Source: Pecten maximus (Eukaryota). Taken from it: 64,000 bases of DNA. The position numbers were made by a program, and so were the translations under genes. The notes under the pieces are model-generated. The model had not been told where the DNA came from, did not search any database, and worked only from the letters and a program-made list of their open reading frames with translations. The stretch lies in contig NC_047015.1 of NCBI RefSeq assembly GCF_902652985.1, positions 23,312,001 through 23,376,000 on the forward strand, written 5' to 3'. This document shows, piece after piece, positions 8,124 to 61,283 of the stretch. Within the stretch, counting starts at the first letter, position 1; each line of letters opens with the position of its first letter.

Positions 8124-8361
8124 CTATCTGTTTTTGACAGGCGTATTAGCTGTACTGACTTGACGTGAATTTTCTGACCGTGGGACCGGCATCTCATACT
8201 CTACCAGAAGGGGGAAGTGGTCTGAGGGCACATGGGGGTGAGGGCAGCCAACAACTTTGTTCTGTTGGAACCAGTTTGCATTCAGGGGGCCAAGCAGACC
8301 GAGTAAGTTCAAGTGGTCACGAGAATAAAAGATGTAATCGATGATACCCTTGAAGTCAAAC
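8124..8361 (-). CDS. CNOT6: CNOT6 last coding exon FDFKGIIDYIFYSRDHLNLLGLLGP...GCPHPHVPSDHFPLLVEYEM...KNR*
   Basis: Acceptor ttgttacAG, IDYIFY and SDHF motifs, TAG stop at 8126-8124. Confidence 0.96.
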
Positions 8362-11300
8362 CTGTAACAAACAACACAACAAAGTTATGCAATATAGCAT
8401 AAAATAGTCCATAAAAATGTAGCTTTCAACATAGCAAAAGAAACAGTTCATTCATCTCTTCACACTGAATGAAACTCAACTTCATCAGTTTTATATGCAT
8501 GGTGCGGTATAATGTTAAGTTTTTAGAAGAAATCAAGCAATATGTTCTTATTATAAAAGATAACATAATCTTACGTGTAATTTGTGAAAGGCATGATATC
8601 ATTGTCGTAGGCACGACCAAGACGGAAATCGTGAAGCAAGAAGTCTTTCTCTGTGGACACATTGATGCGTTGTAGACAATCATCATATCCTCTCTCCTTA
8701 AAGTCCACGTGATTTCTTGATACTTTTCCTGAGTTCAGAAACTCCAAAACACCTTACAGACATAAAAAGAAACAGATTATCATCTACAATTCCTATTTTA
8801 GACTTATTTTAGGAAAAAAATCTCAATGGAAAATAGGATGATAAAATCACAATTTTGACTAATAATCTGTCTAATTTCTTTTTGTTTTGTATCATGCAGC
8901 ATTAGAAAGAATTATTGATGTAAAGTACCATTAGGCCTAATGTTGTAAATACTTCCACTTACAAATTGTTTCAGATCAATATGTACAGGTAGGTAGCTAC
9001 TACAGGATACAACTCCACAGGGATGTAGGTGCCATTCATTGTATGATAGACAGATGGCATCCGGCCAGACACTTCTATCCTGTACTTACATAGCTTACAT
9101 ATCTACCTATCACACTGCAATCTCAAATCATTTCTAAAAAAATACAAGCTATTATGTCTCTTTACATCAAATCCTAACACAGGTGCAGACTGTCTCTTTG
9201 TGTATGAGCTGGGAGTAACCATGTGTCCCTGGTTTTATAGGACTTGGCTGGTAGGCCAGACTTACTACTAGTCCAGTGGTATGTTTAACTTACTACCAGT
9301 CCAGTGGTATGTAGGACTTACTACCGGGTCTTGTGGTATGTAGGACTTACTACCAGTCTTGTGGTATGTAGGACTTACTACCAGTCCAGTGGTATGTAGG
9401 ACTTACTACCAGTCTAGTGGTATGTAGGCCAGGACTTACTACCAGTCTAGTGGTATGTAGGCCAGGACTTACTACCAGTCTTGTGGTATGTAGGACTTAC
9501 TACCAGTCTTGTGGTATGTAGGACTTACTACCAGTCTAGTGGTATGTAGGACTTACTACCAGTCTAGTGGTATGTAGGACTTACTACCAGTCTTGTGGTA
9601 TGTAGGACTTACTACCAGTCTTGTGGTATGTAGGACTTACTACCAGTCTAGTGGTATGTAGGACTTACTACCAGTCCAGTGGTATGTAGGACTTACTACC
9701 AGTCTAGTGGTATGTAGGCCAGGACTTACTACCAGTCTAGTGGTATGTAGGACTTACTACCAGTCCAGTGGTATGTAGGACTTACTACCAGTCTAGTGGT
9801 ATGTAGGCCAGGACTTACTACCAGTCCAGTGGTATGTAGGACTTACTACCAGTCTAGTGGTATGTAGGACTTACTACCAGTCTAGTGGTATGTAGGACTT
9901 ACTACCAGTCTAGTGGTATGTATGACTTACTACCAGTCCAGTGGTATGTAGGACTTACTACCAGTCTAGTGGTATGTAGGCCAGGACTTACTACCAGTCT
10001 AGTGGTATGTAGGACTAACTACCAGTCCAGTGGTATGTAGGACTTACTACCAGTCTAGTGGTATGTAGGCCAGGACTTACTACCAGTCTAGTGGTATGTA
10101 GGCCAGGACTTACTACCAGTCTAGTGGTATGTAGGCCAGGACTTACTACAAGTCTAGTGATATGTATGACTTACTACCAGTCTAGTGATATGTAGGACTT
10201 ACTACCAGTCTAGTGGTATGTAGGACTTACTACCAGTCCAGTGGTATGTAGGACTTACTACCAGTCTAGTGGTATGTAGGACTTACTACCAGTCCAGTGG
10301 TATGTTTAACTTACTACCAGTCCAGTGGTATGTAGGACTTACTACCAGTCCAGTGGTATGTAGGACTTCCTACCAGTCTAGTGATATGTACGACTTACTA
10401 CCAGTCCAGTGGTATGTAGGACTTACTACCAGTCCAGTGGTATGTAGGCCAGGACTTACTACCAGTCTAGTGACATGTAGGACTTACTACCAGTCTAGTG
10501 GTATGTAGGCCAAGACTTACTACCAGTCCAGTGGTATGTAGGACTTACTACCAGTCTAGTGGTATGTAGGATTTACTACCAGTCTAGTGGTATGTAGGAC
10601 TTACTACCAGTCTGGTGGTATGTAGACCAGGACTTACTACCAGTCTGGTGGTATGTAGGACTTACTACCAGTCTAGTGGTATGTAGAGGACTTACTACCA
10701 GTCCAGTGGTATGTAGGACTTACTACCAGTCTAGTGGTATGTAGGACTTACTACCAGTCTAGTGGTATGTAGGACTTACTACCAGTCTAGTGGTATGTAG
10801 GACTTACTACCAGTCTTGTGGTATGTAGGACTTACTAGCTACCAGTCTAGTAGTATCTAGGATTTGACCGGTGAAGACTTTACTTCTCTGTAACATGTAC
10901 AGGAGTTTGAAGTGTGATATTTAGAGTAGTTTGGAGTGTGATATTTAGAGTAGTTTGGAGTGTGATATTTAGAGTAGTTTGGAGTGTGATATTTAGAGTA
11001 GTTTGGAGTGTGATATTTAGAGTAGTTTGGAGTGTGATATTTAGAGAATTTGGAGTGTGATATTTAGAGTAGTTTGGAGTGTGATATTTAGAGTAGTTTG
11101 GAGTGTGATATTTAGAGTAGTTTGGAGTGTGATATTTAGAGTAGTTTGGAGTGTGATATTTAGAGTAGTTTGGAGTGTAATATTTAGAGTAGTTTGGAGT
11201 GTGATATTTAGAGTAGTTTGGAGTGTGATATTTAGAGTAGTTTGGAGTGTGATATTTAGAGTAGTTTGGAGTGTGATATTTAGAGTAGTTTGGAGTGTGA

Positions 11301-14300
11301 TATTTAGAGTAGTTTGGAGTGTGATATTTAGAGTAGTTTGGAGTGTGCTCTTTCGCGTCTTTGGCGTGTCCTCTTTCGCGTCGTTTGGCGTGTGCTCTTT
11401 CGCGTCGTTTTGGCGTGTGCTCTTTCGCGTCGTTTGGGCGTGTGCTCTTTCGCGTCGTTTGGCGTGTGCTCTTTCGCGTCGTTTGGCGTGTGCTCTTTCG
11501 CGCGTTTGGCGTGTGCTCTTTCGCGTCGTTTGGCGTGTGCTCTTTCTCGTCGTTTGGCGTGTGCTCTTTCGCGTCGTTTGGCGTGTGCTCTTTCGCGTCG
11601 TTTGGCGTGTGCTCTTTCGCGTCGTTTGGCGTGTGCTCTTTCGCGTCGTTTGCGTGTGCTCTTTCGCGGCGTTTGGCGTGTGCTCTTTCGCGGCGTTTGG
11701 CGTGTGCTCTTTCGCGTCGTTTGGCGTGTGCTCTTTCGCGTCGTTTGGCGTGTGCTCTTTCGCGGCGTTTGGCGTGTGCTCTTTCGCGGCGTTTGGCGTG
11801 TGCTCTTTCGCGCCTTTGGCGTGTGCTCTTTCGCGTAGTTTGGAGTGTGATATTTAGAGTAGTTTGGAGTGTGATATTTAGAGTAGTTTGGAGTGTGATA
11901 TTTAGAGTAGTTTGGAGTGTGATATTTAGAGTAGTTTGGAGTGTTCCTCACCTGAGTCTGGGAGGGAGTTTAAGTCGCCACATAATATGAGCGGTATGGA
12001 GTTAATGTCCGGGGTGGAGGAACCTGGCCGGAAGCTGCGAATACTTTCTTCGATGATATGCTTGAGTTCCCACATAAGCATCATGGTCTGTATAAGCTTG
12101 ACATCACAGAACTCTGGGTCCCAGTGGATGTGGGCAGTTGCTACCATTATTTGTTGACAGATAAAGTTCTCAGCTGGTGCACCTATGATAAAAAACAATC
12201 TAGGATTACCATTACTATTGCAGCAATATATAGGATTCCAAATCCATTCACAAATGGCATTATCAGTCCTCCGAGTTCTGAGAAGTACACTGATAGATGG
12301 TGTTTTGCTTTTAAATTTAGATTCAACACATCTCACACCTGTGACCTTAAAAGCAGGTCAAAGTCGAAGAAGAAGTCGAAAATGTGAATGGTTTATTGAC
12401 AAATGATGGATGACTGACAAAAGGTCATTAAAATAATTGAGATTTTGTCTCGGTGACCTAAAGATACGAGATTTGTCAAGAGACTATTCACAAGAATCTA
12501 GATAAAAGGGGTAATGGAAATAATATCCATTGCTTAATCAGGATTCTTCCTCTTTCATATAGTAAAGCAGACTTGGGGGATTCCAAAATTCTTTTTCATG
12601 AACTTAAATTGGTCCCCACCTTCCCAACATATCAAAAGATGATCAGCATATGTAACTCTATACATGTAATATTAAGTACAGCAGTTGTCCAATAAAACCC
12701 ACCATTTTCAAAAACACCCTCCTTTGTTTCCAGCATGGCTGCCAGTCCTATATTGTCCTTAGTCATGACCCTGTTAAGCATGTCATCAGAACCCTCAGCA
12801 TTTGCCATGGCAACCTGGTTAAACTCTACTAGATGTTCCTTTAATAAGGAGAATCTGAAATACAATCATAAAGAGGTTTAAGAAGCTGTTCTGATGATGT
12901 AAATCATATATAAATCACATAGAGAACGAGCTTCCAATATATTGGGCTGCCAACATTACTCTCCATCCTCATTTAGTAGTTATATCACTTCACTGCCAAA
13001 ACTACAGCAAGCAAGGTTTATACTAGCCAAACTTTGACTCCACATTATGTCACAGGACGAGATTACCTACTCTATCAAGTGCCCTTTGGGGATGTTTACA
13101 GAGAATTATCTGGCAGACAACATATTCAGACTACAGTGCAGGTTACATAAATATGTCTACACTGTTACAATGTCCTCATTCACTTCAATCCCTCCAAACA
13201 TTATAACTATTCATGTGACTGATGGCTCATCACCTACAATTACCAGTAAATATCTTTTTTTTTTTGATAAAACATGTATAATAAAGGGCACAAACAGAAA
13301 CAGAAAATGACCTGAATCTTCGTACAGCTGTCCTAGGACATACAGTATACAATGGATGGATATTTTTTCATTTACAAGAGTATGCTTATGAAAGCAGGGT
13401 GAAAGTAAGCCAATAAATCTATGAAATACCTACTTTGATGTTCTATAGAATATTGCACAACCATCTACATATTTCCTTTCTGACTCTGTCATGGTCCTTG
13501 CTCGAGATTTGGCAGAGAAGATGCCATCATAGCCATCCCTCTTAAGCTCGGGGAGGAAGAAATTGTAGAACTGGTCAGTTTCTACCTCCTGAAATTACAT
13601 AATTTCAATAATTCAAAAAAAGAAACATGCATGGATTCCAAATACAGATCAAAATTATTAAAAAAATAATGCAGGACAGTTCTACAAATGGGTACAGCAC
13701 ACAGCACTCTGGTACCATACAGGACAGTACTACAGATGGGTACAGCACACAGCACTGGTACCATACAGGACAGTACTACAGATGGGTATACGTACAGCAC
13801 ACAGCACTGGTACCATACAGGACAGTACTACAAATGGGTACAGCACACGGCACTGGTACCATACAGGACAGTACTACAGATGGGTATACGTACAGCACTG
13901 GTACCATACAGGACAGTACTACAGATGGGTACAGCACACAGCACTGGTATCATACAGGACAGTACTACAAATGGGTACAGCACACGGCACTGGTACCATA
14001 CAGGACAGTACTACAAATGGGTACAGCACACGGCACTGGTATCATACAGGACAGTACTACAGATGGGTACAGCACACGGCACTGGTACCATACAGGACAG
14101 TACTACAGATAGGTAATGTATGTGTTTTAGAAATGGATGTTTAACATATTTTGAGATTGGATTTGGTTAAATAGCTCTAAATGATTAAATTATATAGTTT
14201 AAAAAGCTCACAATACTTGTATTTTAAAGAGCATTAGATATTTATTACTGATCTTTTTTGTGATAACAGATCACTACAAAGTTCTAACAAGTGTATGTTA

Positions 14301-20300: not shown

Positions 20301-23300
20301 CTGTGTCTTTATAATGTTCGGTGTTTTTATCAGGCCTACTCTCTACATCATGATCATGATGATTCTAAAGAAACGTTATATTTCTTTATGTGTGGAGGTG
20401 GCTTTTGCCATGTTTGGGTTATTAAAGGTCACATAAGCGCTTGGATTTTCGTCATATTTTTAAGCGTTCTTGCGACTCAAGGGGAGTAACTCTAATTACG
20501 ACTTCCGCCTAAATCATGTTTGTTGTAAAGACGACACCAAAACGGTATTGTACTTACTATAATTTCGTTTGATTGATAGAAACATGTTTAAAAATATTAT
20601 TAAACACATCTTGTACCCGCGTTATGTTGATACATATGCGGGTCACACTAGTGTTTTTGCGTGAATTGGCCCCCACTTATATTCTGCAAGTGGGGGCAAA
20701 ACGTAAATTTAGGGGGATTTTAACGATCCCGCGCCCTGGATCTTTCACTGTACCTGTGTTCCCCATGTTAAATACCTGTGTTCCCCGTGATGAATACCTG
20801 TGTTCCCTGTGTTAAATACCTGTGTTCCCCATGTTAAATACCTATGTTCCCCGTGATGAATACCTGTGTTCCCTGTGTTAAATACCTGTGTTCCCCATGT
20901 TAATACCTGTGTTCCCTGTGTTAAATACCTGTATTCCTCGTGATGAATACTTGTGTTCCCAATGTTAAATACCTGTGTTCCCCATGTTAAATACCTGTGT
21001 TCCCCATGTTAAATACCTGTGTTCCCTGTGTTAAATACCTGTGTTCCCCATGTTAAATACATGTGTTCCTGATGTTAAATACCTGTGTTCCCCATGTTAA
21101 ATACCTGTGTTCCCCGTGATGAATACCTGTGTTCCCCATGTTAAATACCTGTGTTCCCCATGTTAAATACCCATGTTCCCCGTGATGAATACCTGTGTTC
21201 CCCATGTTAAATACCTGTGTTCCCCATGTTAAATACCTGTGTTCCCCGTGATGAATACCTGTGTTCCCTGTGTTAAATATCTCTGTTCCCTGTGTTAAAT
21301 ACCTCTATTCCCTGTGTCAAATAAAATTTCATTTCCCCAGAAGATTATCTAGTGACCTTTCAGGAAACCTAGCTAATGATCTTTATTACAAGTACATAAT
21401 CCAGAGAACTTTATTCCAAGAAAACAATCAAGTGACCTTTATTCCACGAAGATAATTCAGTGACTGGTTTTCCAAACAGGAAACCTAATGAGCTTCATTA
21501 TAAGTATAAATGTTATCAGGTATAAGTAGAGTGACAGAACAAGAGATAAAGGAAAACATGGGGTGGCTGTAATGACAAGGACTCACCTGTAGACAGATGA
21601 TATCTGCAGCACAATGTTTGATCTCCTCCATGATGCCCTTCTTCCTGTACTCCCAGTTGAGGGCCCATGAGGGGCAGTACCCGTACAGCTGTCTTGTGCA
21701 GTATTTATCACAAAGTACATTGTAGCACATCACAGTGAAGATGGCTGCAACATAAACAATAGATATAAATGTCATGGGTAGCATAAAATCATTGAATTGT
21801 ACACATGAACAGAACTACTGTATTATTACTTTGACATACCAGTCACTGGTAACTACAGTATAGTTTGACATACCAGTCACTGGTAAATACTGTATTCTTA
21901 CTTTGACATACCAGTCACTGGAAACTACGGTATTCTTACTTTGACATACTAGTCACTGGTAACTACAGTATTCTTACATTGACATCGTGTTTTATTATCA
22001 TTATTTTTTTGTTGTTATTTTTTCTGCAGACCAGGTACTATTTTTAATGGCAGACGTATAATTACTCATGGAATATTTTTAATGAGTGTCGACCATTTCA
22101 AGTTAATAGACCTATCTTAAAATTGTAATATTTTAATAAATAATTAAATTTGTTTTCATTTCATAAAAACTTCTAGACTCATTTCATAAAATCTCATATG
22201 AAATGAAAACTCATTTAAGATCCTATATGTGTATGGTTTCATTCAGGTATCTGCAACAACTACTAAGTTAAACCCAAAACATGGTGTTATTGACCAGATT
22301 TGGCATATGACCATAAACTGTAACCTTGTCTATGACCTCATGAATGTATATATATATAGATATGTATTTTATATGGTAGAGGTCTATAATAACAAACAAA
22401 TAGAAAGCTGGAACTAGAATCTGAAAAGTTGAATGTGAGTTAAGGCTGTAGGTTCCTAGATTTGTTTATGCTGTGGTATAAACCACACCTTTTAACCTTG
22501 AACAGATTTATACATTATAGATAGTGTGAAGGAATTCATCACTGTACATACTGTACACAGATATCCTTTACTGTAAGGTATATCAATACACGCTATCAGG
22601 CATTCATTAGCAATGAAACAAAGGTAATACATAATGCTTGCTTATTTTTTACTGACCCCGATAGGTTGTTAAAGGGACAAAAAATTACCTGATCTGTGTG
22701 GTCAGTGTAAGGAAGGTCAAGTGATTTAACTGACCATCAAGCAATAAACAGTAGGACTACATGCCTAATTTATCCTGTACTCTGTCCAGTCACTATATAC
22801 ATTAACCAAACAAGGAAAATCGGTAACACTGAAAGCAGATATCAAAATACTTATATTACACCCATACAGGTCTTTGCCCTTAAGCATGATCAGTACATCA
22901 GAAACTTAGTGTCAGTATATATGTAGATATTATTATATGTAGTGTCAGTATATATGTAGATATTATTATATGTAGTGTCAGTATATATGTAGATATTATT
23001 ATATGTAGTGTCAGTATATATGTAGATATTATTATATGTTGTGTCAGTATATATGTAGATAATATTATATGTTGTGTCAGTATATATGTAGATATTATTA
23101 TATGTAGTGTCAGTATATATGTAGATATTATTATATGTTGTGTCAGTATATATGTAGATAATATTATATGTTGTGTCAGTATATATGTAGATATTATTAT
23201 ATGTAGTGTCAGTATATATGTAGATATTATTATATGTAGTGTCATGACAGTATATATGTAGTTATTATTATATGTTGTGTCAGTATATATGTAGATAATA

Positions 23301-26300: not shown

Positions 26301-29300
26301 TGAAGTCCCACTGGTAACACCTGACAGACTCTGTACCTAAATACCTCCTTTCTCATACCTCTTCTAGCCCAACCCTTCACTCCATAAACTGACACAGATT
26401 TAAATATGACCTCACCACTTCCAGCCTCATGCGGTGGTTATCATGTAGGACTATTAATTACATAAAAACATGTAAGCCTAAAACTCTGTGTGTGTGTGTA
26501 ACCATTGTAGGTTAATAGATTACTGGTGTACATCCTCACCAACCTCTCCACTTGTCAGTGTTTTCCTGCAAACCATTATAGAGTTTTATTAAGCTGCCAG
26601 TCAAAGTCAACATTGTTGCAAATTCCTAAAATTCTTGAATAATTTTTGTTGCTTTGCCATAAAAAACAAGCATTCCCATAAAAACTATTTACACTCCCCC
26701 ATTAGATAATGTTTAAAATGTATTCTGTACCAAAAGAAACCACTAATTACAGAATAAAATGTCATCAGGTCTTTTACTGTGCATCACAACAGGCTAATTA
26801 TCATCAAATATTGTTGTGTTCTAAATTATCCAAGGTTTATAAATTTCCTTGATTTGATATCTGCATATGTATATGGTTTTTTCATAAGATTTTTTCTAGA
26901 TTATTTAGTGGCAATATATATATATATAAAAAAGAAAGAAAAACATTCTGTCCAAAACATTTGAATTACATTTCTATGTAAAATATATGTACATGTACAT
27001 ATAAAGGTGATGATCATGATATGACTGTTTCTCAGTGGGTTTAATTTCTGGCTACCTCATCATGTGGAACTGCATAATGACAGTGACTATACCCTCCAGC
27101 CATATCTGTCCTCTTGGCCAGAGCTAGTGTAATGACCATCAAACCAAGAATGTAAGGGTTAACATTCCAATGCCATAAAACTGTACCCTGAACACACCCC
27201 ACATCAGTTAGGCCATCTGTAATATCACTGTAGTTTTGACATGGTTTGACACCTCAAATAATCGTCACTAGATTTCATCTCTAAGGATATCACCTGCTTT
27301 TCGTGATGATATATATAGAAAGTTTGTGGTGCATCCCCACAGCTACAATATCATCACCGGATCACCGTCTGGTATGTTAATTATGCTCCTCTACATTTTT
27401 TGTAACCTTTTTTTCTTTATGTTTGATGTTTTCAATAGACTGTGTGTATGTTTTATGTGAATGTAAAAAAAAAAATAAAAAAATCAGTCAACAAAATAAA
27501 TAGTTGAATAAAACATTCCTCATATAAAAAATGTAATTTCAAATTAACTGAAAACTCTGTTGAAATGTGCATAAGGGGTATCAGTATATAAAATAAATTC
27601 AACATTAATTTGATAATCATTATCATTACACATAGCAATTATACACCTAACACCATTGAATTGACAAAACCTATTTATAAAACCCAACTTTTTTTGTTTA
27701 AGCAACAGGAAGCAATCCCACACTCCCTTCGCCACCTACTCCCAGATGACTGTAGTGACCATGTGTTGCATGGCTACACCTCAAAATATATGTGCATGCC
27801 TACAATTTGTTTTGACCCTGACAAGAATTGTTGAATAACACAGCTTATCCTAATTGCATCTGCTCTCAATCCTGACTACATGTAAACCCAGTCCATGACC
27901 CTGCTGCACCTGTATACCACAGGAAACAACCTGAACCAAGCAGCTCAGTACAGGCCAGATTAGACACATCGCATTATAACATCAAATATAGTAATAATCT
28001 GAGATGGGATTATTGTTATGTTGTATGTTATGTTCTAAATCAATACTTTTACTGTATTCAAGCTATCAAAATAATGAGTCACCATTGAACTTTTTGTGTT
28101 TTTGATTCATGCCATTAAATATTCCTGACCTTGGCACAGAGGACAGTTGATATACAAATGTATACTGTTTGTATACTCCTGACCTTGACTGAGAGGACAG
28201 TTGATATACAAATGTATACTGCTTGTATACTCCTGACCTTGACTGAGAGGACAGTTGATATACAAATGTATACTGCTTGTATACTCCTGACCTTGACTGA
28301 GAGGACAGTTGATATACAAATGTATACTTTGTATACTCCTGACGTTGACTGAGAGGACAGTTGATATACAAATGTATACTTTGTATACTCCTGACCTTGA
28401 CTGAGAGGACAGTTGATATACAAATGTATACTGTTTGTATACTCCTGACCTTGACTGAGAGGACAGTTGATATACAAATGTATACTGTTTGTATACTCCT
28501 GACCTTGACTGAGAGGACAGTTGATATACAAATGTATACTGTTCGTATATTAATGACCTTGATGAGAGGACAGTTGATATACAAATGTATACTTTGTATA
28601 CTCCTGACCTTGACTGAGAGGACAGTTGATATACAAATGTATACTGTTTGTATACTCCTGACCTTGACTGAGAGGACAGTTGATATACAAATGTATACTG
28701 TTTGTATACTCCTGACCTTGACTGAGAGGACAGTTGATATACAAATGTATACTGTTTTATTTTACACAATTTGTCCGAGAGGTATAACTAATATACAGAT
28801 GTTGCCTGAGAAGTATTTCTAACCTTGATCCAGGGGTACATATGATTTATATGTGTAGCAAGCTTTATTCTGAATGTCAAAAAACAAAAACAGCTTCTTC
28901 AGTTTTCTTGTTTCATTAATGTGTTTGTTAAAATAACTGCTGACTCTAGTAAAATTTAATCAACAAATATTTTTAAAATGCTAAGCATGACAACAGTCGT
29001 CGGTGCTTATATATAATATGAACACAGACAAATGCAAGGTAAGGGATGGGTGGTACAAACTTCAGAACCGTATCACGCATTTCATTAGTAACAATTTATC
29101 ATCTGTCAGATAGCTCTCCTCACAACTACCTACAGGCAGTATATATTTACCTTCACCCATTGCAGACCCATCAACATTAGATTAATCACAGCTTTAAAAC
29201 AATTCTAAGTTGTTTTTTAAAGTTTGCCTTATCTAAATTTACTCATGAAATTCAAATAATTGTAGGAGTGAACTAGTCTCTCACCTGTTGGTCTGTTCCT

Positions 29301-32300
29301 TTCAGAATTGGCTAACCATACCCACTGTCGACTAGGCGGCTGAGTGGAATTGACTGAAATGACAATAACAATACATATCAAAATGAGAATGTAATTAATT
29401 TATGAAACACTTACTTCACTTACAAATGTTATGAAGTCTCACAAAGTCCCTTGTTTCACCACAGCAATAAACAGTACACTCTTCCATAGGGTGGGATGCA
29501 CTATAACATACTTGAAGAAGGGTTATTTTTTGGTTTTGTGCCTTTGGCAGTTCTCATTGTTCAAGATACTCTGAAAGTGATCTGTAATGCCTTGGGAGAA
29601 GGCATCCATTAAAGTACTATTGGAAAAAAGAAATTCATGCTTTCTTCAGGAGGTCCAGGCTAGCCTAGATCAATGTGCCAGTGCCCGATTGGCCCCCTTA
29701 CGGATCAGATTAATTTGTCACCAATTTCTACTCTCATCTATAAATAGGTTGACAGGGTAGGAATAAAGAAAGTGATGTCTGGGACAGTATCAAACATACA
29801 CACGAAGTAAAGAGGTAACTCCTCTTGTGATTTTATCACAAAGCTGCTAGTGGAAATGCAAAACAAACCTTTGAGAACTTCCAAAACTTCTAAAAGACCC
29901 TGCAGCTCAGGAAGTCAGAATGAGCTGAATGTTCAGTTAGATCAAGGTCATATGATATAATCCTGTACTTGTTTATATATATGGACCAATGTGGGGGTAA
30001 GGGCCATGTAGTAGTCCATAGGGACTTATTTGGAGCTTGAGGCTAGGCTCATCTACTAGTCTCTGATCTATAGGGACCAAGCTTAACTAGTCTATAGGGA
30101 CCAATTTGGGGACTAGGTTAATGTACTTATCTATAGGGGTGGGGGCAATGTGGGGCTACAAGACTCATAATGCACAAGGCTATAGGGGGTCAATGTGGGG
30201 GCTGATCCTGTTACAGTCTATAGAGGCCAATCAGGGGGCTAGGACCCTGTTAGTCTATAGAGGCCCAATGTGGGGGGCTAGGACCCTGTTAGTCTATAGA
30301 GGCCCAATGTGGGGGCTAGGATCCTGTTAGTCTATAGAGGCCCAATGTGGGGGCTAGGATCCTGTTAGTCTATAGAGGCCCAATGTGGGGGCTAGGATCC
30401 CGTTACAGTCTATAGAGGCCCAATGTGGGGGGCTAGGATCCTGTTAGTCTATAGAGGCCCAATGTGGGGGGCTAGGATCCCGTTACAGTCTATAGAGGCC
30501 CAATGTGGGGGGCTAGGATCCTGTTAGTCTATAGAGGCCCAATGTGGGGGGCTAGGATCCTGTTAGTCTATAGAGGCCCAATGTGGGGGGCTAGGATCCT
30601 GTTACAGTCTATAGAGGCCCAATGTGGGGGGCTAGGATTCTGTTACAGTCTATAGAGGCCCAATGTGGGGGCTAGGATTCTGTTACAGTCTATAGAGGCC
30701 CAATGTGGGGGGCTAGGATCCTGTTACAGTCTATAGAGGCCCAATGTGGGGGCTAGGATCCTGTTACAGTCTATAGAGGCCCAATGTGGGGGGCTAGGAT
30801 CCTGTTACAGTCTATAGAGGCCCAATGTGGGGGGCTAGGATTCTGTTACAGTCTATAGAGGCCCAATGTGGGGGCTAGGATTCTGTTAGTCTATAGAGGC
30901 CCAATGTGGGGGCTAGGATCCCGTTACAGTCTATAGAGGCCCAATGTGGGGGGCTAGGATCCTGTTACAGTCTATAGAGGCCCAATGTGGGGGCTAGGAT
31001 TCTGTTACAGTCTATAGAGGCCCAATGTGGGGGGCTAGGATTCTGTTACAGTCTATAGAGGCCCAATGTGGGGGCTAGGATCCTGTTACAGTCTATAGAG
31101 GCCCAATGTGGGGGCTAGGATTCTGTTACAGTCTATAGAGGCCCAATGTGGGGGGCTAGGATCCTGTTACAGTCTATAGAGGCCCAATGTGGGGGGCTAG
31201 GATCCTGTTACAGTCTATAGAGGCCCAATGTGGGGGCTAGGATCCCGTTACAGTCTATAGAGGCCCAATGTGGGGGCTAGGATCCTGTTACAGTCTATAG
31301 AGGCCCAATGTTGGGGCTAGGATTCTGTTAGTCTATAGAGGCCCAATGTGGGGGCTAGGATTCTGTTACAGTCTATAGAGGCCCAATGTGGGGGGCTAGG
31401 ATTCTGTTACAGTCTATAGAGGCCCAATGTGGGGGGCTAGGATTCTGTTACAGTCTATAGAGGCCCAATGTGGGAGGCTAGGATCCCGTTACAGTCTATA
31501 GAGGCCAATGTGGGGGGCTAGGATCCTGTTAGTCTATAGAGGCCCAATGTGGGGGGCTAGGATCCCGTTACAGTCTATAGAGGCCCAATGTGGGAGGCTA
31601 GGATCCCGTTACAGTCTATAGAGGCCCAATGTGGGGGGCTAGGATCCTGTTAGTCTATAGAGGCCCAATGTGGGGGCTAGGATTCTGTTACAGTCTATAG
31701 AGGCCCAATGTGGGGGGCTAGGATTCTGCTCGTCAAGTTCTATCAACATTTATATTAAACCATGCATGGTGATAAGATCTGGTATCAGGTGCCTGCTCCA
31801 GATGACAGCCCAGATAATGATATTTAAACTCTCAATACACAAAGAAAAAAACATGTACACAACATAGTTTATCAAATCTCCATCCACAAAAAAACAATGC
31901 CCCGAGAGTCCTGATGTGTATATGGCAGAGGTCAGTGTAGGACACCACCGACATGTGTCAGTGACATGCTATATGGACCTATACCTATCAGCATGTATAA
32001 TATGTATATCAATCATACAACAGCTGCTGTTCAAAGTTACATCAAAAGGGGGGAAATTACGCTCTGAATAAATTGAATTTTAATCAAATGTTTCTGAATT
32101 AATTGAAACCTGAGCCTCAGATATACAACAGGACAAAGTAAGAATAGTCTTGTTTATGGAAGAAATGAAGAATTTTAACAGGTCTTTATGTGCATGTGCA
32201 TAAATAATACCTAAACAGCAGGTAGGAGTCAGCCATGCTGAACATGTTGACTTATACTGCCTTTATTGGGAGTCCATGTATAGGTGGGATAAAGGCAACA

Positions 32301-35300: not shown

Positions 35301-38300
35301 AATTAAAAAAGTACTTTGTACAAGACATTTCATATATAGATATAAGTTATTTTTAATACTCTGTTTTCTTTGCTGTATTTTCTACCCTAGACTAATATCA
35401 ACAGATTAGGGATAATGATTCCTCTTTATTGAGGAAATCTGAGCAAAATTTCTTTTCTTCTGGTCCAAGTTCACTAAAATATTGTGATACTGGTGTTAAT
35501 TGTGTTAATACTGGACATGACAACACCGAAAATTAATACCACTCACAAATATCTGACATTTACACAATTCAACTTCTACCATAGTAAACTAGTGGTAAAA
35601 CAGAAACTTAGTAAAACTAATGACTTCAAGTTTATGTCTACAGTTCCACTGACCTGGTTTCTAGATTACCCCTGCCATAAGTGTAGCATGCAGCATACAA
35701 TTATTAATATCACTCAGGCTTGGCTCCCTTTTGTTTTGATCTTGTTCTACTGGCTAACTCTGGATAATGTAATGTACAGATCAGCAATCAAGTCATGTCT
35801 GGCTTAAACTCAATGGCTGACTTATGCTAGGTTGTGGACCTAAATCTGTTAAGGTCATTTTATACAGAATAAACATTATTTTTTTGGTTTATCTGAGGTT
35901 AGTTTGTTGTCCTTACAAAAGGTAAGATTGTATAACAACAGTAACCATATATCTGACAGGGCGTCATCTGAAATGTCATAATCTGCAATTTCTGTACACG
36001 GTATCATGACAATCCACCCTGTCACATTAAACAGGCTAACCAGATTCTTGTTCCAATATATAAAGACAAAGGTTAAACGGAGAGTAGTGAGTACATTTAA
36101 TTATAAGGATATTTTGTTTGTCTTGGTCAGGAGACTAGAACCCATGGCCTTCTTTACTTCCAAACTCAACTCTTGCCAAGTCAAGCAATACAAAAAGTAG
36201 AAGGAAGTAGAAAGGAGATAAAAATATTTTCTTTGTTTTCGTGACATTTGAGTCGATTGAGAGGGCACAACACAAAAACCTCAATATCCTGTACTCAGCT
36301 GTAGGGATCTAAATTTCCATCTTAGGATTACAATGAGTTTAATTGTATAATGAATTCAACATAAAGTAAGCAGTTACTTGAATCTTAATTGACAGTACTT
36401 TATTTCACCACAGTGCACTTTTCTTTTTTGATAGAGCACATTTGTAACCAATAAAAAGAAGAGTCATACACAAAAAAAAAAAAAAAAAAAGAAGAATCAA
36501 TTCCCTTTGGTAACAGTTGAAATTAGATAAGTTATGATCATTTATTTTATGATTATTCGATCAAACCAATAGGTGACAATGCCCAAGATATTATACTCAC
36601 AAGATCTTAGTTGATGTGGGGGGATCATCTGTGTCTTGGGGACATTGGTTGTGTCCAGGGGGTGGCTGTACATAGAAGTGGCAAGGCTGTATACTGGAGG
36701 GTAGATGTATGGCCAGTACCAGTGGGGCACCGACATGTGGGACAGGTCTGTCAACGATTCCGAGGAGGGCTCCCCCGAAACACCAGACTGCCACATCAAC
36801 TCAGACATGGAATGATTCCTGGAAGTTGCATAGTTGTTTTCAGCACTATGTAGCTGACTGATGATGCCTGATGAATCATTAGTGTCTATTAACCAGCTAT
36901 GATCATAATACACAGTAAATGTTACATCAGTACCCGTCAAATCAACATAAACACTGTCAGGGAACAGGTCTTCACTGGATTTACCTCCCCTTCCAGCAAT
37001 ATCTATATCCAGCAGTTGTCTACCCCTGTCAGATCTTTGGCAATTGTTCTTTGGATTTCTAGATTTGAATGGTTGAGCATTTTTGGATAATTTGGACTGA
37101 GCGGGTGGTATGGTAGGTGAGACTTCAGAGGAATCAGTTGTGGTTGTCAAAGATGCCTCATCAGCTTCCGAATCTCGTATAGTAGTAGGTACAGTGAAAG
37201 ATGCAGGACTTGGTTCCTCACACTCCTGGTCCTCATGGAATTCAAAGGCATTGTCTCCATGGTCATAGTAATACCGACTATTATACAAATCAGATAGACA
37301 CTGAGGACATTCTGAGGGTGGGCAGTCAAATCGTACCAGGGGACATCCTGTTGTGAACAAAGCCAATTTCTCCAACTCGTCTTTGGACATTCTGGAATTC
37401 TCTGAATTTTCGTATGAAACGGACTGATCAGAGTCAGACTGGATTTCAGAACTTGAGATTGTAGATCCATTTTCACTCTCTGTATCTTCTGTTGTAACAG
37501 AACTTTTCTCACTGCTATTCAAGTCATTGCATATGACATCAACATTTTCACATTCGATGATGCTCCTGGGTCGAGAGCTGTCCTTTGTGTCAGTGACATA
37601 GTTTGCATTATTGAGAACATAATTAGCCACAAGTTTTGAATTTCTGTTTTGGGCACTGTGTGTGAAATTTGTACACCTGTCTTTCTGATGGGACTTCTCT
37701 ATGACAGAGATTAAGGCACTTAGATGTTTGACATCATTCTTTCGTTTGAGATGTTTGATGTTGGTTGAATTGTCCTCCCTACCTGAAGAACTGTCCCCTT
37801 CGTTGTCTATGGATACCTCAACATCCTTACATTTGATTACAGTGTCCGCCAGAGAGCGCTGTTTCTGTCTCAGAGCTGCCTTTAAAGAATCTTTTAGCTG
37901 AATGACAATTGGGGTATTGGATTTAGTTGGCTTCTGGCGAGATTTCTGTTTCCATTTGGGGCTATTTCGTGAACGTTCTTTTTGGCACTTTTTACATGCT
38001 TGATGAGTTGTAGTGGCAGGACTCTTCCACATGTTTTTAACATAAATGGGTTCTACAGGCTCAACCGCGTCCATTATACTGACCACTTCACGCTTGACCA
38101 CTGCCATCTTAGCCATGTATATATTTCAAAGACTCACTGACCTTAGAACTGCATTCTGTTGTGACTGGACCCACGTCCCCTTTAGTTATGACAGGACGTG
38201 TTCTATCCGCAATGGTTTGCTATATTCACCTGTGTATCATAAGACAAAGGCTTCGGTGTTTCTAGGTAGGAGCATGCCAATAACTCTATTACAATTACGT

Positions 38301-41300
38301 AGTCTTACACACAACAAGGTCCGTTTTCGTCACTTAAGCCATCAATTCAAACACAAAAAACACTCAATTTGAAGCAGTGGTTCTAAACAAAACCTCCACA
38401 AGTTTCACTGACTCAAGTTCAGGTAATGATCACACCAATAACCGTCTCACAGGAACACCAACACATAACATAAAAGTAGACAAAGAGCCAATCCTCAATG
38501 GGCACACGATTTGTACACTGACACAGACCTCTCTCCACCCAAGGAGATTTGTCCAATACGTAATGTCTACTTATAGAGTCTGTGTGTTAGATATCCCAAT
38601 CCTTCAATAGAATCTTACTGAATACTGTGGAAATGAGATCAACATTAGAATTTTGTTAAACGGTGACAATTTCCTGCTCTTTGTTCGGCTAGTGACATGT
38701 GCTTTGGTTGAGAGTCCAGTGGACACAAGGCCATTGCCCCGGTAAATATTTAGTCAGAACCTTGATCTGATGAAAATGTCACCAAGTAGTACTAATAAAG
38801 TAGTCACCTGTTTAGAAAGTTACATCACATCATTACACATTACTGATGATATCACTGATCATATATGTATTACACACCTCCTTCCAGCCATTTTCTCCGA
38901 TACCATCCAAGTAAATAGTCCATATCTCAATAAAATCAAATCCAGACTTTTGTTTAGAAAATAAACAGGTATATGGCAGGGTTGAGTGAGGTGAGGTGTC
39001 TAGCGTGTTCCCCCAGGGCTGTATCACACAGGGGTTAGAACACCTAGGTAAGGTATACACAGTACTAATAGTGTTGTACACACATGTAGCTCCATTCCCG
39101 GTGTGGTTCACGCATGTCTGTGTTCAGTGGCGGGTATATCCATTCAAGTTCAGTAATCTGTGTATGATTAGTTAACCAAGCCTGCAAAAAAGGTCGTATA
39201 CTGTGATATCCCTCGCCAACAGAGAAAGTCACTGGTTAACAAAGGCCAGGACTGTACACAGTAGTAGTTTACCATACAGGCTTAAAGGCAAATGTTTATG
39301 ATGATTATCATATACCTGTTAAAGTGTTCACTGCCTATTAACTGTAGATCCTGAGTCAATACTATAAGTCCTTATTCACATGCTACTTTCCTTTTTGTGG
39401 ACCATGTGCTTTCACAGGCAGTTAGTACACGCTGATTAATTTTATGAATGGCTGTGAGTAGGAGTTGTAGAAGTGTTATCTTATCGGGTGTCAGGAGTTG
39501 TAAGATTCTTGACCTTGTACCTGATGACACTCCCCCACACACATTTGACCCCATTGAGGGGCTAGGCTAAGGGAGGGGCAATAGATGAGTAACACTTCAC
39601 TTCAGGAGATGCATTTTGTCCTGGTACATTCCCCATAACCACACCAGTAAAGCAGCGGTGACGTAGAGCGGTGAGGTGAACAATTACTTCACATACCAAC
39701 CTTGTTTGCTTAGTAATCCTTTTGTTATCGTTTTGTCTGTTGATCAAAACGAAATATATGTTATTCTCGGAAAAGTCTGGAGAAAGGAGAAAAGAAGCCA
39801 CTTTGTTGTGATGTATAAGAGCATACACTGGTAGGGCGGCTCATTAATCAGTTATTATGAAGTGTATACATACAGGTAAAGCTGCTCCTTCATTAATCAG
39901 TCATTATGATGTGTGGCAGACCAACATGTGCTGGCTATATATATTACCATGTATACATGTGTGTGTCCCTATCTCACCTCTATCTATGGCTTTGATATCC
40001 GCATGGGTCCTACACAGGCCCTATACTGATGTGTCCACTCATGGGTTGATGTACTTGCCCCTGAAGATGAGCTTACCTTTGACCATCTATATAACCAGTG
40101 GAGGTGTATATGTCCTCTCAGTACACCTTGGCCTTGCTAGCTATGTACTCCTTCGTGTGTACGTCCTATTTCAGACAGTGCTGATGACCACTGTGCACTG
40201 CGTTCCTGATAGAATGCCCCTAACTGCCTCCCCTACACAGGTCCTCAGACCCTCAACATCACAAATTCCATGATGGTTCCCATTTGTCATACAACCAGCT
40301 CACCATCTCTCTCCAGTGCAGGGGAAATCACCTCAACTTCATGACATCACAAATGCTAATCAACATCTCCAGCATCCATAGCTAGTCACATGACCGACAT
40401 CATTGCCAAAGAGTAGTGTTCCACTGGTTTTTCTAAACATTAGAGAGTGGTCGTACACAATAACCAATAAACAGCTTTTGTTATTCTTCCAGCCTCTCGG
40501 TGAATAGAAAATATTGTCAAATAAAAGGTGGAGTCAATAATTTAAGAACTAGAGCCTTGACTCATCAGCTGACAGGGTGTTATACAACCAAGACTAATGC
40601 TGGTTTTGTTTAATCCTAGTTCTGGTGACAATTATTATTAATTCTAATAAAAACACACACTATATAAATCTATAACAAAATATACATATTGATGCTATAT
40701 ATATATATAGGAGCTTTATTTTTCAGGACATCATGTTCCGAGGAAGGCAATATGAGTCAGTACTGTTATGTGTATATAGTAAAGAGCAGGAAATCAATAC
40801 AGAAGAAGCCCCAACAATATCAAAATGTCATTACAAGATTGATATTGTACTAAACATTTACTATCCTTATCTGGAGTCGGGAAAGCTACAGCTGGCGTGA
40901 TGGCTTTATATAAGGGCTTTGTCCCTTTCTCAGGTCATCAACATCTATATCACCTTACACAAGCATCTCCTATATAGCTATCTCACACCAAAAGATTAAA
41001 CTGAATATAGGAACTCCAACAGGCTTCTTTAAACTCAGATATAATGGGAATGAGTTAAGAGACTTGGTTTATCATACCTAAGATTATTGTATTGTACATT
41101 TTAAAACCATTTAGATTGCAAGAAAATGACTTTTAACCACATATGTAATGCCATTGTCAGGCAATTATGATTTCGACCTATTTTATTCATTAGGACACTT
41201 CATCGTGATTTTGTCCTGTTTTATTCCTCAGGACACTAAATTGTGATTTCGTCCTATACTATTCCTTAGGACACTTAGTTGTAATTTTGTCCTATATTAT

Positions 41301-61251: not shown

Positions 61252-61283
61252 CTGAACAACCAGAAAAAAGAATTATATGAGTT

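What the first reader, a model, noticed from the sequence alone, without database searches (positions are those of the whole stretch)
36601..38116. Large alternative first exon predicts an LRR-less 898-aa CCR4 deadenylase isoform
Seen: this is the only long non-repetitive ORF in the window. It lies on the CCR4 strand in the intron between the last LRR exon and the linker/nuclease exons. An in-frame TGA lies four codons before its ATG and there is no pyrimidine tract, so it looks like a first coding exon. After 505 codons + 1 nt there is a consensus donor (TCT T|GTGAGT). Joined to the phase-1 acceptor at 29353 it reads ...HQLRS-F-NSTQPPSRQW... and stays open to the normal stop (2697 nt, 898 aa). 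Known: fungal and animal CCR4 docks on CCR4-NOT through LRR-CAF1 binding. Inference: this isoform keeps the full EEP nuclease but cannot dock via the LRR, so it may be a CCR4-NOT-independent deadenylase from an internal promoter. I do not recognise the N-terminus as any known family.
Basis: partly seen in the sequence, partly recalled or inferred. Interest (0 to 1): 0.9.

Follow-up and report, generated by a model that had tools for sequence, protein, structure and literature searches.

The report
LRR-less CCR4 deadenylase isoform, scallop
The king scallop's only CCR4 deadenylase gene really does make a second mRNA from a large exon inside an intron, and this swaps the CAF1-docking LRR domain for a 505-residue, mostly disordered N-terminus; the isoform is already a RefSeq model and is conserved in molluscs, brachiopods and annelids, but nobody has studied it.

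Summary
The ORF at 36542-38116(-) is real and single-copy in the genome. It ends in a phase-1 GTGAGT donor at 36601.

Transcript contigs from four runs in four studies leave the genome exactly at 36601. They continue with the letters of the exon that starts at 29353.

Eight GT-AG exons in the window reproduce the NCBI model 'uncharacterized protein LOC117328226 isoform X1 [Pecten maximus]' residue for residue (898 aa, 2697 nt). So the isoform is already in RefSeq, without a name or a study.

The locus is the genome's only CCR4-type gene. Its last LRR exon (61153-61252) and a 15-nt micro-exon lie upstream of the ORF. The other LRR exons lie just beyond the window.

The N-terminus has no Pfam, PDB or Atlas match, and AlphaFold2 predicts it mostly disordered. 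Nine short blocks and six cysteines are conserved. dN/dS is about 0.10.

Only 62 relatives exist among 1.84 billion representative proteins. Every named one is a mollusc, brachiopod or annelid, and every full-length model is fused to the nuclease.

Chelicerates swap in unrelated N-termini at the same exon boundary.

Independence from CCR4-NOT is plausible, by analogy with human Ccr4b lacking its LRR, but it is untested. The transcription start is not mapped.

The parts
36601..38116 (-). Coding part of the alternative first exon: ATG at 38116, then 505 codons plus 1 nt (phase 1). It encodes the LRR-replacing N-terminus.
   Evidence: ORF and sequence; 100% identity to P0040 residues 1-505; covered by transcript contigs in four runs; dN/dS 0.10.
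38117..39504 (-). 5' leader, contiguous with the coding exon in transcript contigs (minimum extent). It holds 25 upstream ATGs, all with short uORFs. The true start is not mapped.
   Evidence: contigs reach 38936 (X1), 39172 (X15) and 39504 (X2) with no joint or loose end; weaker contigs continue to about 40400; uATG count.
36595..36600 (-). Splice donor GTGAGT of the alternative first exon.
   Evidence: loose ends lie exactly at 36601 in four runs. T|GTAAGT is conserved in the related scallop-like locus L010.
29285..29353 (-). Shared linker exon (phase-1 acceptor; F-NSTQPPSRQW...). This is where the LRR and LRR-less isoforms converge.
   Evidence: the loose-end letters at 36601 are the reverse complement of this exon's first 30 bases.
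21587..21744 (-). Shared EEP nuclease exon (P0040 residues 529-581).
13434..13588 (-). Shared EEP nuclease exon (residues 582-633).
12703..12854 (-). Shared EEP nuclease exon (residues 633-684).
11952..12182 (-). Shared EEP nuclease exon (residues 684-761).
8575..8752 (-). Shared EEP nuclease exon (residues 761-820).
8124..8361 (-). Last coding exon (residues 820-898) with the TAG stop at 8126-8124.
61153..61252 (-). Last LRR exon of the canonical isoform. The 898-aa isoform does not use it.
   Evidence: 100% identity to residues 130-162 of the LRR-bearing Ylistrum CNOT6-like protein P0038.
60609..60623 (-). Predicted 15-nt micro-exon of the canonical isoform (V-TGSN-F), with an AG acceptor and a GTAAGT donor. 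It ends in the same phase-1 T as the alternative exon.
   Evidence: sequence match to P0038 ...DHLVVTGSNF... Its use in this species is inferred and was not checked with reads.
37922..37996 (-). Conserved C41-x2-C44 followed by a basic stretch (residues 41-65). The stretch resembles a bipartite nuclear localisation signal.
   Evidence: C41 and C44 are conserved in 100% of 76 sequences; alignment. The NLS reading is pattern-level inference.
37871..37918 (-). Conserved block NTPIVIxLKDTLKAA (residues 67-82), at the start of the best-predicted helix (74-97).
   Evidence: mean identity 0.76; helix with pLDDT about 76-79.
37391..37555 (-). Conserved ECxNVDxICNDL (residues 188-200) followed by an acidic, serine-rich tract (201-242). 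Together they resemble a phospho-regulated SUMO-interaction motif.
   Evidence: C196 conserved in 96%. The SUMO reading is a hypothesis from pattern only.
37298..37375 (-). Most conserved block: LExLAxYTTGCPLxRYDCPPSECPQC (residues 248-273), including C265, C270 and C273.
   Evidence: mean identity 0.74; C270 99%, C273 97%; the only stretch, and not significantly, matched in chelicerate N-termini.
36902..36952 (-). Conserved strand-like block VYxDLTDTDVTFTVYY (residues 389-405).
   Evidence: mean identity 0.76; L393 is invariant.

Best explanation
**What it is.** This is a genuine alternative 5' exon of the single-copy CCR4 (CNOT6-like/twin) gene of Pecten maximus. It is expressed and evolutionarily old.

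**How the mRNA is made.** A transcript starts inside the roughly 31-kb intron that separates the LRR exons from the linker/nuclease exons. Its first exon carries a long leader rich in upstream ORFs, then 505 codons plus 1 nt. It splices in phase 1 from 36601 to the shared exon at 29353.

**The product.** The result is an 898-aa protein. A mostly disordered N-terminus, studded with conserved short motifs and six conserved cysteines, is fused to the complete, catalytically intact EEP nuclease.

**Shown.**
- The exon, the junction, the transcripts and the identity to the RefSeq model.
- A single copy in the genome.
- Purifying selection on the exon.
- Conservation of both the N-terminus and its fusion to the nuclease in Mollusca, Brachiopoda and Annelida.

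**Inferred.**
- The only known CAF1-docking surface, the LRR, is absent. The protein most likely acts as an active poly(A) 3'-exonuclease.
- Its location and targets would then be set by its own linear motifs, not by LRR-CAF1 docking into CCR4-NOT.
- Candidate motifs are a basic NLS-like stretch, SUMO-interaction-like hydrophobic cores beside an acidic serine tract, and a possible Cys4 zinc site formed by C41/C44 and C270/C273.
- The many upstream ORFs in the leader suggest tightly regulated translation.
For: **Exon and ORF:**

**Junction in transcripts:** in all four runs laid (four studies), contigs stop matching the genome at 36601. Their next letters equal the exon at 29353. One 4797-nt contig carries 2461 further downstream letters.

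**Gene model:** eight exons with unique GT-AG junctions reproduce P0040, the Pecten maximus LOC117328226 isoform X1 of 898 aa.

**No upstream splice:** contigs are collinear with the genome for 820-1388 nt upstream of the ATG.

**Single copy, single locus:** this is the only strong N-terminus match and the only strong CCR4-type EEP locus in the 918-Mb genome.

**LRR exons of the same gene:** at 61252-61153, and just beyond the window at positions equivalent to 64294-64022 and 71587-71464.

**Nuclease intact:** E 9e-160 to the human CNOT6L nuclease domain over residues 509-880, with the LQEVET, GDLNS and PSDHF motifs present.

**Selection:** dN/dS 0.10 against a relative with 71% amino-acid identity, with the donor conserved.

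**Distribution:**
- Only 62 profile hits among 1.84e9 representative proteins.
- Named hits are bivalves, gastropods, a chiton, Lingula, and the annelids Owenia, Ridgeia and Paralvinella.
- Every full-length model carries PF03372 and no LRR.
- The contigs behind P0155 (4007 nt, 1018 aa) and P0056 (4929 nt, 877 aa) are too short to hold an intron-bearing gene, so I infer they are spliced mRNAs of the same fusion in a mollusc-like species and an annelid.

**Disorder and motifs:**

**Background on loss of the LRR:** human Ccr4b without its LRR loses Caf1a/Ccr4-Not binding yet stays an active deadenylase (PMC3057700).
Against: - No protein-level evidence exists, neither mass spectrometry nor antibody data.
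- The 25 upstream ATGs in the leader would normally depress translation.
- Contigs cannot show the transcription start, the expression level or the tissue.
- Nothing here tests binding to CAF1, NOT1 or CNOT9. A motif in the N-terminus could dock the protein back into CCR4-NOT by another route, as the zf-MYND-like domain does in plant CCR4 (PMC7105381).
- The motif readings (NLS, SUMO-interaction, zinc site) are pattern-level only. AlphaFold2 gives no confident fold that would support a zinc site.
Confidence: 0.72

Rival explanations
1. The isoform is still a CCR4-NOT subunit. One of its conserved motifs or its cysteine cluster would bind CAF1, CNOT9 or NOT1 directly, replacing the LRR as the docking device. 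This would build a variant CCR4-NOT complex with different regulation.
For: [quoted passage not shown]
- Drosophila Nocturnin, which also lacks an LRR, was reported to associate with CCR4-NOT subunits (PMC4033318).
- The N-terminus has six conserved cysteines and conserved helices.
- Chelicerate LRR-less isoforms share a short L..LA..G.PLI motif with it (not significant).
Against: - There is no MYND or any other Pfam domain.
- Nothing resembles a solved CCR4-NOT-binding peptide or domain by sequence.
Confidence: 0.22
2. The transcript is mainly regulatory or non-productive. An intronic promoter would give a poorly translated mRNA loaded with upstream ORFs, whose role is transcriptional interference with, or titration of, the canonical CCR4 mRNA. 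The protein would matter little.
For: - There are 25 upstream ATGs in at least 1.39 kb of leader.
- There is no protein-level evidence.
Against: - dN/dS is 0.10.
- The ORF, its phase-1 donor and nine sequence blocks are kept across molluscs, a brachiopod and annelids. Such conservation only makes sense if the protein is made and used.
Confidence: 0.04
3. The ORF is a separate nested gene or a captured mobile-element ORF that merely sits in the CCR4 intron.
For: It is a long intronic ORF with its own ATG and an in-frame stop just upstream.
Against: - It is a single copy in the 918-Mb genome.
- Transcripts splice it to the nuclease exons.
- No transposase, reverse-transcriptase or other Pfam domain is present.
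- The same fusion is present in three phyla.
Confidence: 0.01

Closest known systems
Canonical metazoan CCR4 (CNOT6/CNOT6L; Drosophila twin), the LRR-EEP deadenylase subunit of CCR4-NOT
   Same: It is the same gene and uses the same seven downstream exons. The EEP nuclease domain matches human CNOT6L at E 9e-160. This is the only such locus in the genome.
   Different: The LRR, which is the CAF1-docking domain, is absent. A 505-residue, mostly disordered N-terminus from an intronic first exon takes its place.
Engineered human Ccr4b lacking the LRR (Mittal et al. 2011, PMC3057700)
   Same: It is a CCR4 nuclease without the LRR. In human cells that construct loses Caf1a/Ccr4-Not binding but stays catalytically active, changes localisation and slows proliferation. 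It is the best available functional model for this isoform.
   Different: It is an artificial truncation. The scallop isoform is natural, conserved across three phyla, and replaces the LRR with a long conserved sequence instead of simply deleting it.
Plant CCR4 (zf-MYND-like plus EEP)
   Same: It is a CCR4 orthologue in which the LRR is replaced by a cysteine-containing N-terminal module (PMC7105381).
   Different: The plant module is a recognisable MYND-type zinc finger that binds a PxLxP motif of CAF1. The scallop N-terminus matches no Pfam family, its cysteines are scattered over 230 residues, and its partner is unknown.
LRR-less CCR4-like paralogues: Nocturnin, ANGEL1/2, PDE12
   Same: They are EEP-family enzymes that lack the LRR and act outside the LRR-CAF1 route (PMC4033318).
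   Different: They are separate genes with diverged nuclease domains; the query matches PDE12 at E 7e-31 and ANGEL2 at 9e-25, against 9e-160 for CNOT6L. Here the nuclease is CCR4's own, shared exon for exon with the canonical isoform.
LRR-less CCR4 isoforms annotated in chelicerates (Panonychus, Centruroides, Rhipicephalus) and Drosophila species
   Same: In same-species isoform pairs the long and LRR forms diverge at exactly the homologous boundary, immediately before N-x-[ST]-x-PP-x-R-x-W. They too are alternative 5' exons that replace the LRR.
   Different: Their N-termini are not detectably homologous to the lophotrochozoan one. The local profile search found no match. hhalign gave only a 23-column hit at E 0.18 over L..LA..G.PLI.

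Membership tests
CCR4 / CNOT6-type deadenylase (EEP nuclease of CCR4-NOT) | A C-terminal endonuclease-exonuclease-phosphatase domain closest to CNOT6/CNOT6L, with the catalytic motifs present | tested here: met
   PF03372 is recorded on P0040. Residues 509-880 align end to end with the human CNOT6L nuclease domain 3NGN at E 9e-160, and the LQEVET, GDLNS and PSDHF motifs are present.
CCR4 / CNOT6-type deadenylase (EEP nuclease of CCR4-NOT) | An N-terminal leucine-rich repeat domain that binds CAF1 | tested here: not met
   The 898-aa isoform contains no LRR residues; its N-terminus has no Pfam hit, and long-isoform models carry PF03372 only. The same gene's canonical isoform does have the LRR: exons at 61252-61153 and beyond the window.
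CCR4 / CNOT6-type deadenylase (EEP nuclease of CCR4-NOT) | Poly(A)-specific 3'-exonuclease activity and incorporation into CCR4-NOT | not testable with these tools
   This needs recombinant protein assays and co-purification. Activity is expected by analogy with human Ccr4b lacking the LRR (PMC3057700).
Plant-type CCR4 (zf-MYND-like plus EEP) | A MYND-type zinc finger at the N-terminus | tested here: not met
   There is no Pfam family at E up to 1. The conserved cysteines C41, C44, C196, C265, C270 and C273 do not follow MYND spacing.
Nocturnin / ANGEL / PDE12 (LRR-less CCR4-like paralogues) | A separate gene with its own diverged EEP domain | tested here: not met
   The nuclease exons are those of the CCR4 locus itself. 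PDB matches to PDE12 and ANGEL2 are 130 orders of magnitude weaker than the match to CNOT6L.
Lophotrochozoan CCR4 alternative N-terminus (undescribed family, defined here) | Collinear conserved blocks (CxxC-ER, NTPIVIxLKDTLKAA, NVDxICNDL, LAxYTTGCPLxRYDCPPSECPQC, LLDID, DLTDTDVTFTVYY, PKTxMIPPxEL) ending in a phase-1 junction to the CCR4 linker exon | tested here: met
   Alignments A1 and A2. The profile finds 62 proteins in 1.84e9. The fusion to the EEP domain is seen in molluscs, Lingula and annelids.

The most novel reading that the evidence does not exclude
The 505-residue N-terminus could be an ancient targeting module, older than the split of molluscs, annelids and brachiopods. It would take CCR4's own nuclease out of CCR4-NOT and into a separate pathway, for example nuclear or SUMO-dependent, or zinc-dependent through C41/C44/C270/C273. 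Chelicerates and flies swap other N-termini onto the nuclease at the same exon boundary. Together this would mean that a two-mode CCR4, one form docked in the complex and one free, is an ancestral protostome feature that the yeast- and mammal-centred literature has missed.
Probability: 0.3. Interest if true: 0.7.

Novelty: new variant of a known kind. Interest (0 to 1): 0.5.

Why it matters
**What the field assumes.** CCR4 is treated as an obligate, LRR-docked subunit of CCR4-NOT. Recent reviews discuss isoform heterogeneity of the complex but mention no natural LRR-less CCR4 (PMC12746107; PMC4033318).

**What is new here.**
- A natural isoform replaces the LRR with a long conserved sequence.
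- It is under purifying selection.
- It is fused to the nuclease in three phyla.
- Other protostomes swap unrelated N-termini onto the nuclease at the same exon boundary.

This suggests that many animals deliberately run CCR4's nuclease in a second mode.

**Why it can be tested.** The isoform has a unique 1.5-kb exon, which allows isoform-specific knock-down, in situ hybridisation and tagging. It is present in tractable species such as oysters and annelids.

**Caveat.** The sequence is not a discovery in itself. It is already a RefSeq model labelled 'uncharacterized protein'. The value lies in recognising what that model is and how widely it is conserved.

Tried and rejected
**Searches on the N-terminus that found nothing.**
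- Pfam: no family at E up to 1.
- ESM Atlas: best score 0.78, below any useful level.
- PDB profile search: only a chance hit to a designed protein, E 0.26.

**Structure prediction.**
- AlphaFold2 on the exon alone (18 sequences) gave mean pLDDT 44.
- AlphaFold2 on the full 898 aa (76 sequences) gave an N-terminus mostly below pLDDT 50.
- I therefore ran no fold search, since a low-confidence model gives meaningless matches.

**Homology to chelicerate N-termini.** This was not established. The local hmmsearch found nothing and hhalign gave E 0.18.

**Mobile-element and nested-gene readings.** Both are rejected. The ORF is single-copy and is spliced to the nuclease exons.

**Complex prediction was not used.** The obvious partner, CAF1, is split over several exons in this genome.

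**Look-ups that returned nothing.** The look-up of encoding contigs gave no record for P0040 and no DNA for the Owenia locus. Synteny in an annelid could therefore not be checked directly.

**Handling of the spliced model.**
- Exons were searched by reference or through the database protein P0040.
- Only junction codons were checked, in a local script.

**Literature.** Searches found no paper on this isoform.

**Limits of the read evidence.** The sequencing runs are coded and stored as contigs. Tissue, stage, level and transcription start could not be read.

Full report
**1.
- The ORF listing finds a 524-aa ORF at 36542-38116 on the minus strand.
- The ATG is at 38116 and an in-frame TGA lies four codons upstream, at 38128-38126.
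- After 505 codons plus one base the sequence reads tct t|gtgagt, so the last exon base is 36601.
- The acceptor at 29353 reads tttcag|tcaattcc. The split codon T+TC gives F, then NSTQPPSRQW.
- Every other ORF of 90 aa or more in the window lies in one of the many intronic minisatellite arrays or is short.
- With GC near 0.40, a 524-codon open frame has a chance probability of about 1e-15 per start (my estimate).
- The window has no N.

**2. It is a known gene model of a known species.**
- The exon's translation finds 36 relatives. The best is an 881-aa Argopecten irradians 'uncharacterized protein isoform X1' carrying only the Exo_endo_phos domain.
- A search with that protein's nuclease part returns P0040, 'uncharacterized protein LOC117328226 isoform X1 [Pecten maximus]', 898 aa.
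- P0040 residues 1-505 are 100% identical to 38116-36602.
- Eight exons with unique GT-AG junctions reproduce all 898 residues: 38116-36601, 29353-29285, 21744-21587, 13588-13434, 12854-12703, 12182-11952, 8752-8575 and 8361-8124.
- The genome has 918 Mb in 3983 contigs, and the window is C1:23312001-23376000.
- I sent no joined model to any search tool. The comparison used the database protein and a local check of junction codons.

**3. The splice is seen in RNA.**
- No run holding the stretch is recorded as RNA. The four I laid are small assemblies, two of them guessed to be RNA, and their content is that of transcriptomes, as the next points show.
- In all four, from four studies, a contig stops matching the genome exactly at 36601. 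The letters beyond that point are the reverse complement of the first bases of the exon at 29353 (table 7).
- One 4797-nt contig carries 2461 further downstream letters, enough for the remaining coding sequence and a 3' UTR.
- The intron below 36601 holds only scattered 151-nt contigs of depth 2-3.
- Upstream of the ATG, the contigs stay collinear with the genome to 38936, 39172 and 39504, with no joint or loose end. Weaker contigs continue to about 40400.
- So the exon is used as a 5' exon, and nothing links it to the LRR exons.
- Contigs cannot show a transcription start, a level or a tissue.
- The leader from 38117 to 39504 holds 25 upstream ATGs with short uORFs. That is unusual and suggests regulated translation, or that the main start lies closer to the ATG.

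**4. It is the same gene as the canonical CCR4.**
- A six-frame search of the whole genome finds the N-terminus once. The CCR4-type nuclease exons occur only at this locus; the next best match is 37% identical on another contig.
- Residues 130-162 of the LRR-bearing Ylistrum CNOT6-like protein (P0038) match 61252-61154 at 100%.
- A 15-nt micro-exon encoding V-TGSN-F lies at 60623-60609. It has an AG acceptor and a GTAAGT donor and ends in the same phase-1 T as the alternative exon. Its use is inferred from the relative's protein.
- The main LRR exon lies 22 bases beyond the window, at equivalent positions 64294-64022. The canonical ATG exon is at equivalent 71587-71464.

**5. What the N-terminus is.**
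- It has no Pfam family, no useful Atlas neighbour and no PDB relative.
- AlphaFold2 predicts the 505 residues as mostly disordered. Helices of moderate confidence lie at 42-48, 74-97, 129-142, 245-255 and 271-287. The nuclease at 510-884 folds with high confidence.
- In a 76-sequence alignment, conservation is concentrated in nine blocks (the Pecten residues 367-373 read QLLDIDI):
  - CxxCxKE (41-47)
  - NTPIVIxLKDTLK (66-79)
  - KNxxAxISVIEKxH (129-143)
  - VLNN (166-171)
  - ECxNVDxICNDL (188-200)
  - SSSExQS (219-227)
  - LExLAxYTTGCPLxRYDCPPSECPQC (248-273)
  - LLDID (368-372)
  - VYxDLTDTDVTFTVYY (389-405)
- A tenth conserved stretch, PKTxMIPPxEL, lies at the exon's end.
- Six cysteines are kept in 88-100% of sequences: C41, C44, C196, C265, C270 and C273.
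- From pattern alone I note several candidate motifs:
  - a basic, bipartite-NLS-like stretch after C44;
  - hydrophobic cores of the SUMO-interaction type (PIVI; VDVI followed by an acidic serine tract; LLDIDI; YVDLT);
  - two CxxC pairs, each at the start of a predicted helix, that could form one zinc site;
  - a PPxY in pteriomorph bivalves.
- None of these was testable here.

**6. It is conserved and selected.**
- Against the exon of a related species (locus L010, 71% amino-acid identity), dN is 0.19 and dS is 1.8, so dN/dS is about 0.10. dS is saturated, so the ratio is approximate. The phase-1 T|GTAAGT donor is kept.
- A profile of 18 N-termini, scored against 1.84 billion representative proteins, finds only 62 proteins. 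One of them is a low-complexity bacterial false hit.
- Named members are:
  - bivalves: Pecten, Mizuhopecten, Argopecten, Mytilus, Pinctada, Saccostrea, Crassostrea, Sinanodonta, Mactra, Ruditapes, Dreissena, Tegillarca;
  - gastropods: Haliotis, Gigantopelta, Patella, Bulinus;
  - a chiton (Liolophura) and the brachiopod Lingula;
  - the annelids Owenia, Ridgeia and Paralvinella.
- Wherever a full gene model or a long contig exists, the N-terminus is fused to the nuclease and there is no LRR.
- Many hits of about 500 aa are the bare exon, called as an ORF on short contigs.
- The exon therefore predates the divergence of molluscs, brachiopods and annelids.

**7. A wider pattern.**
- RefSeq also holds LRR-less CCR4 isoforms for chelicerates and Drosophila species.
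- In same-species pairs (Gigantopelta, Panonychus, Centruroides) the long and LRR forms become identical at exactly the homologous point, immediately before N-x-[ST]-x-PP-x-R-x-W.
- The chelicerate N-termini share motifs among themselves but not detectably with the lophotrochozoan one.
- hhalign's only hit is 23 columns over L..LA..G.PLI at E 0.18. This is a lead, not evidence.

**8. How it most likely works.**
- Shown: an expressed mRNA that encodes the intact CCR4 nuclease behind a conserved, disordered, motif-rich N-terminus and without the LRR.
- From the literature:
  - The LRR is how CCR4 binds CAF1 and so joins CCR4-NOT (PMC8216464; PMC4033318).
  - Human Ccr4b without its LRR loses Caf1a/Ccr4-Not binding, remains an active deadenylase, becomes exclusively cytoplasmic and slows proliferation when overexpressed (PMC3057700).
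- Inferred, about 0.7: the scallop isoform is an active poly(A) exonuclease directed by its own linear motifs and not by LRR-CAF1.
- The main rival, about 0.2, is docking into CCR4-NOT by another surface. Plant CCR4 does this with a zf-MYND-like domain (PMC7105381).
- A purely regulatory transcript is unlikely given the selection on the protein.
- A nested gene or mobile element is excluded.

**9. Novelty and score.**
- The sequence and the splice are already public as an unnamed RefSeq model.
- I found no paper on this isoform, and recent reviews of CCR4-NOT heterogeneity do not mention a natural LRR-less CCR4.
- I therefore rate it a new variant of a known kind. It is of moderate interest: real, old, testable, and of unknown mechanism.

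Noticed in passing
window 60609-60623 (-): A 15-nt micro-exon (tcactggctcaaact) with an AG acceptor and a GTAAGT donor. It encodes V-TGSN-F of the canonical LRR isoform and lies about 530 nt downstream of the last LRR exon. It ends in the same phase-1 T as the big alternative exon.
   Followed up: partly
window 38669-38689, 38843-38907, 39106-39136 (-): Three short collinear islands in the 5' leader are 78-90% identical to the upstream region of the related locus L010, although synonymous sites are saturated (dS about 1.8). They may be promoter or leader control elements.
   Followed up: partly
window 38117-39504 (-): The leader that transcript contigs cover holds 25 upstream ATGs, all with uORFs of 1-35 codons. 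The first ATG (38116) has a weak context and the second, at codon 4, a strong one. The Argopecten model starts at that second ATG.
   Followed up: partly
window 2778-60324, e.g. 9259-10862, 10904-11944, 15769-17398, 24721-25692, 30180-31728, 41235-42628, 57485-58346: The CCR4 introns are packed with minisatellite arrays of 22-86-nt units, up to 55 copies each. These arrays generate all the other long ORFs in the window.
   Followed up: no
L016:22-294 (-) and L016:7464-7587 (-), i.e. 22 and about 7500 bases beyond the window's end: The main LRR exon (residues 42-132) and the canonical ATG exon (MPKDNKYEKY..., residues 1-41, preceded by an AG acceptor) of the same gene lie just outside the window.
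   Followed up: yes
proteins P0071, P0073, P0069, P0101, P0152 (chelicerates); P0132, P0133, P0147 (Drosophila species): Other protostomes have annotated LRR-less CCR4 isoforms with unrelated N-termini that join at the same exon boundary. The chelicerate ones share their own motifs: QKYIGxCLI, LAxxxQGxPLI, SLPRVIKPRKRRK, CxCxxCLSP and DLEIKF.
   Followed up: partly
window 37061-37093 (-), residues 342-352: KLSKNAQPFKS loosely resembles a PAM2 (PABP-binding) motif, but it is conserved only among scallops.
   Followed up: no
G000:C4:20576353-20577528 (-), locus L012: The genome's best CAF1 (PF04857) match is a multi-exon gene on another chromosome-scale contig. It is the natural partner to test against both CCR4 isoforms.
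   Followed up: no
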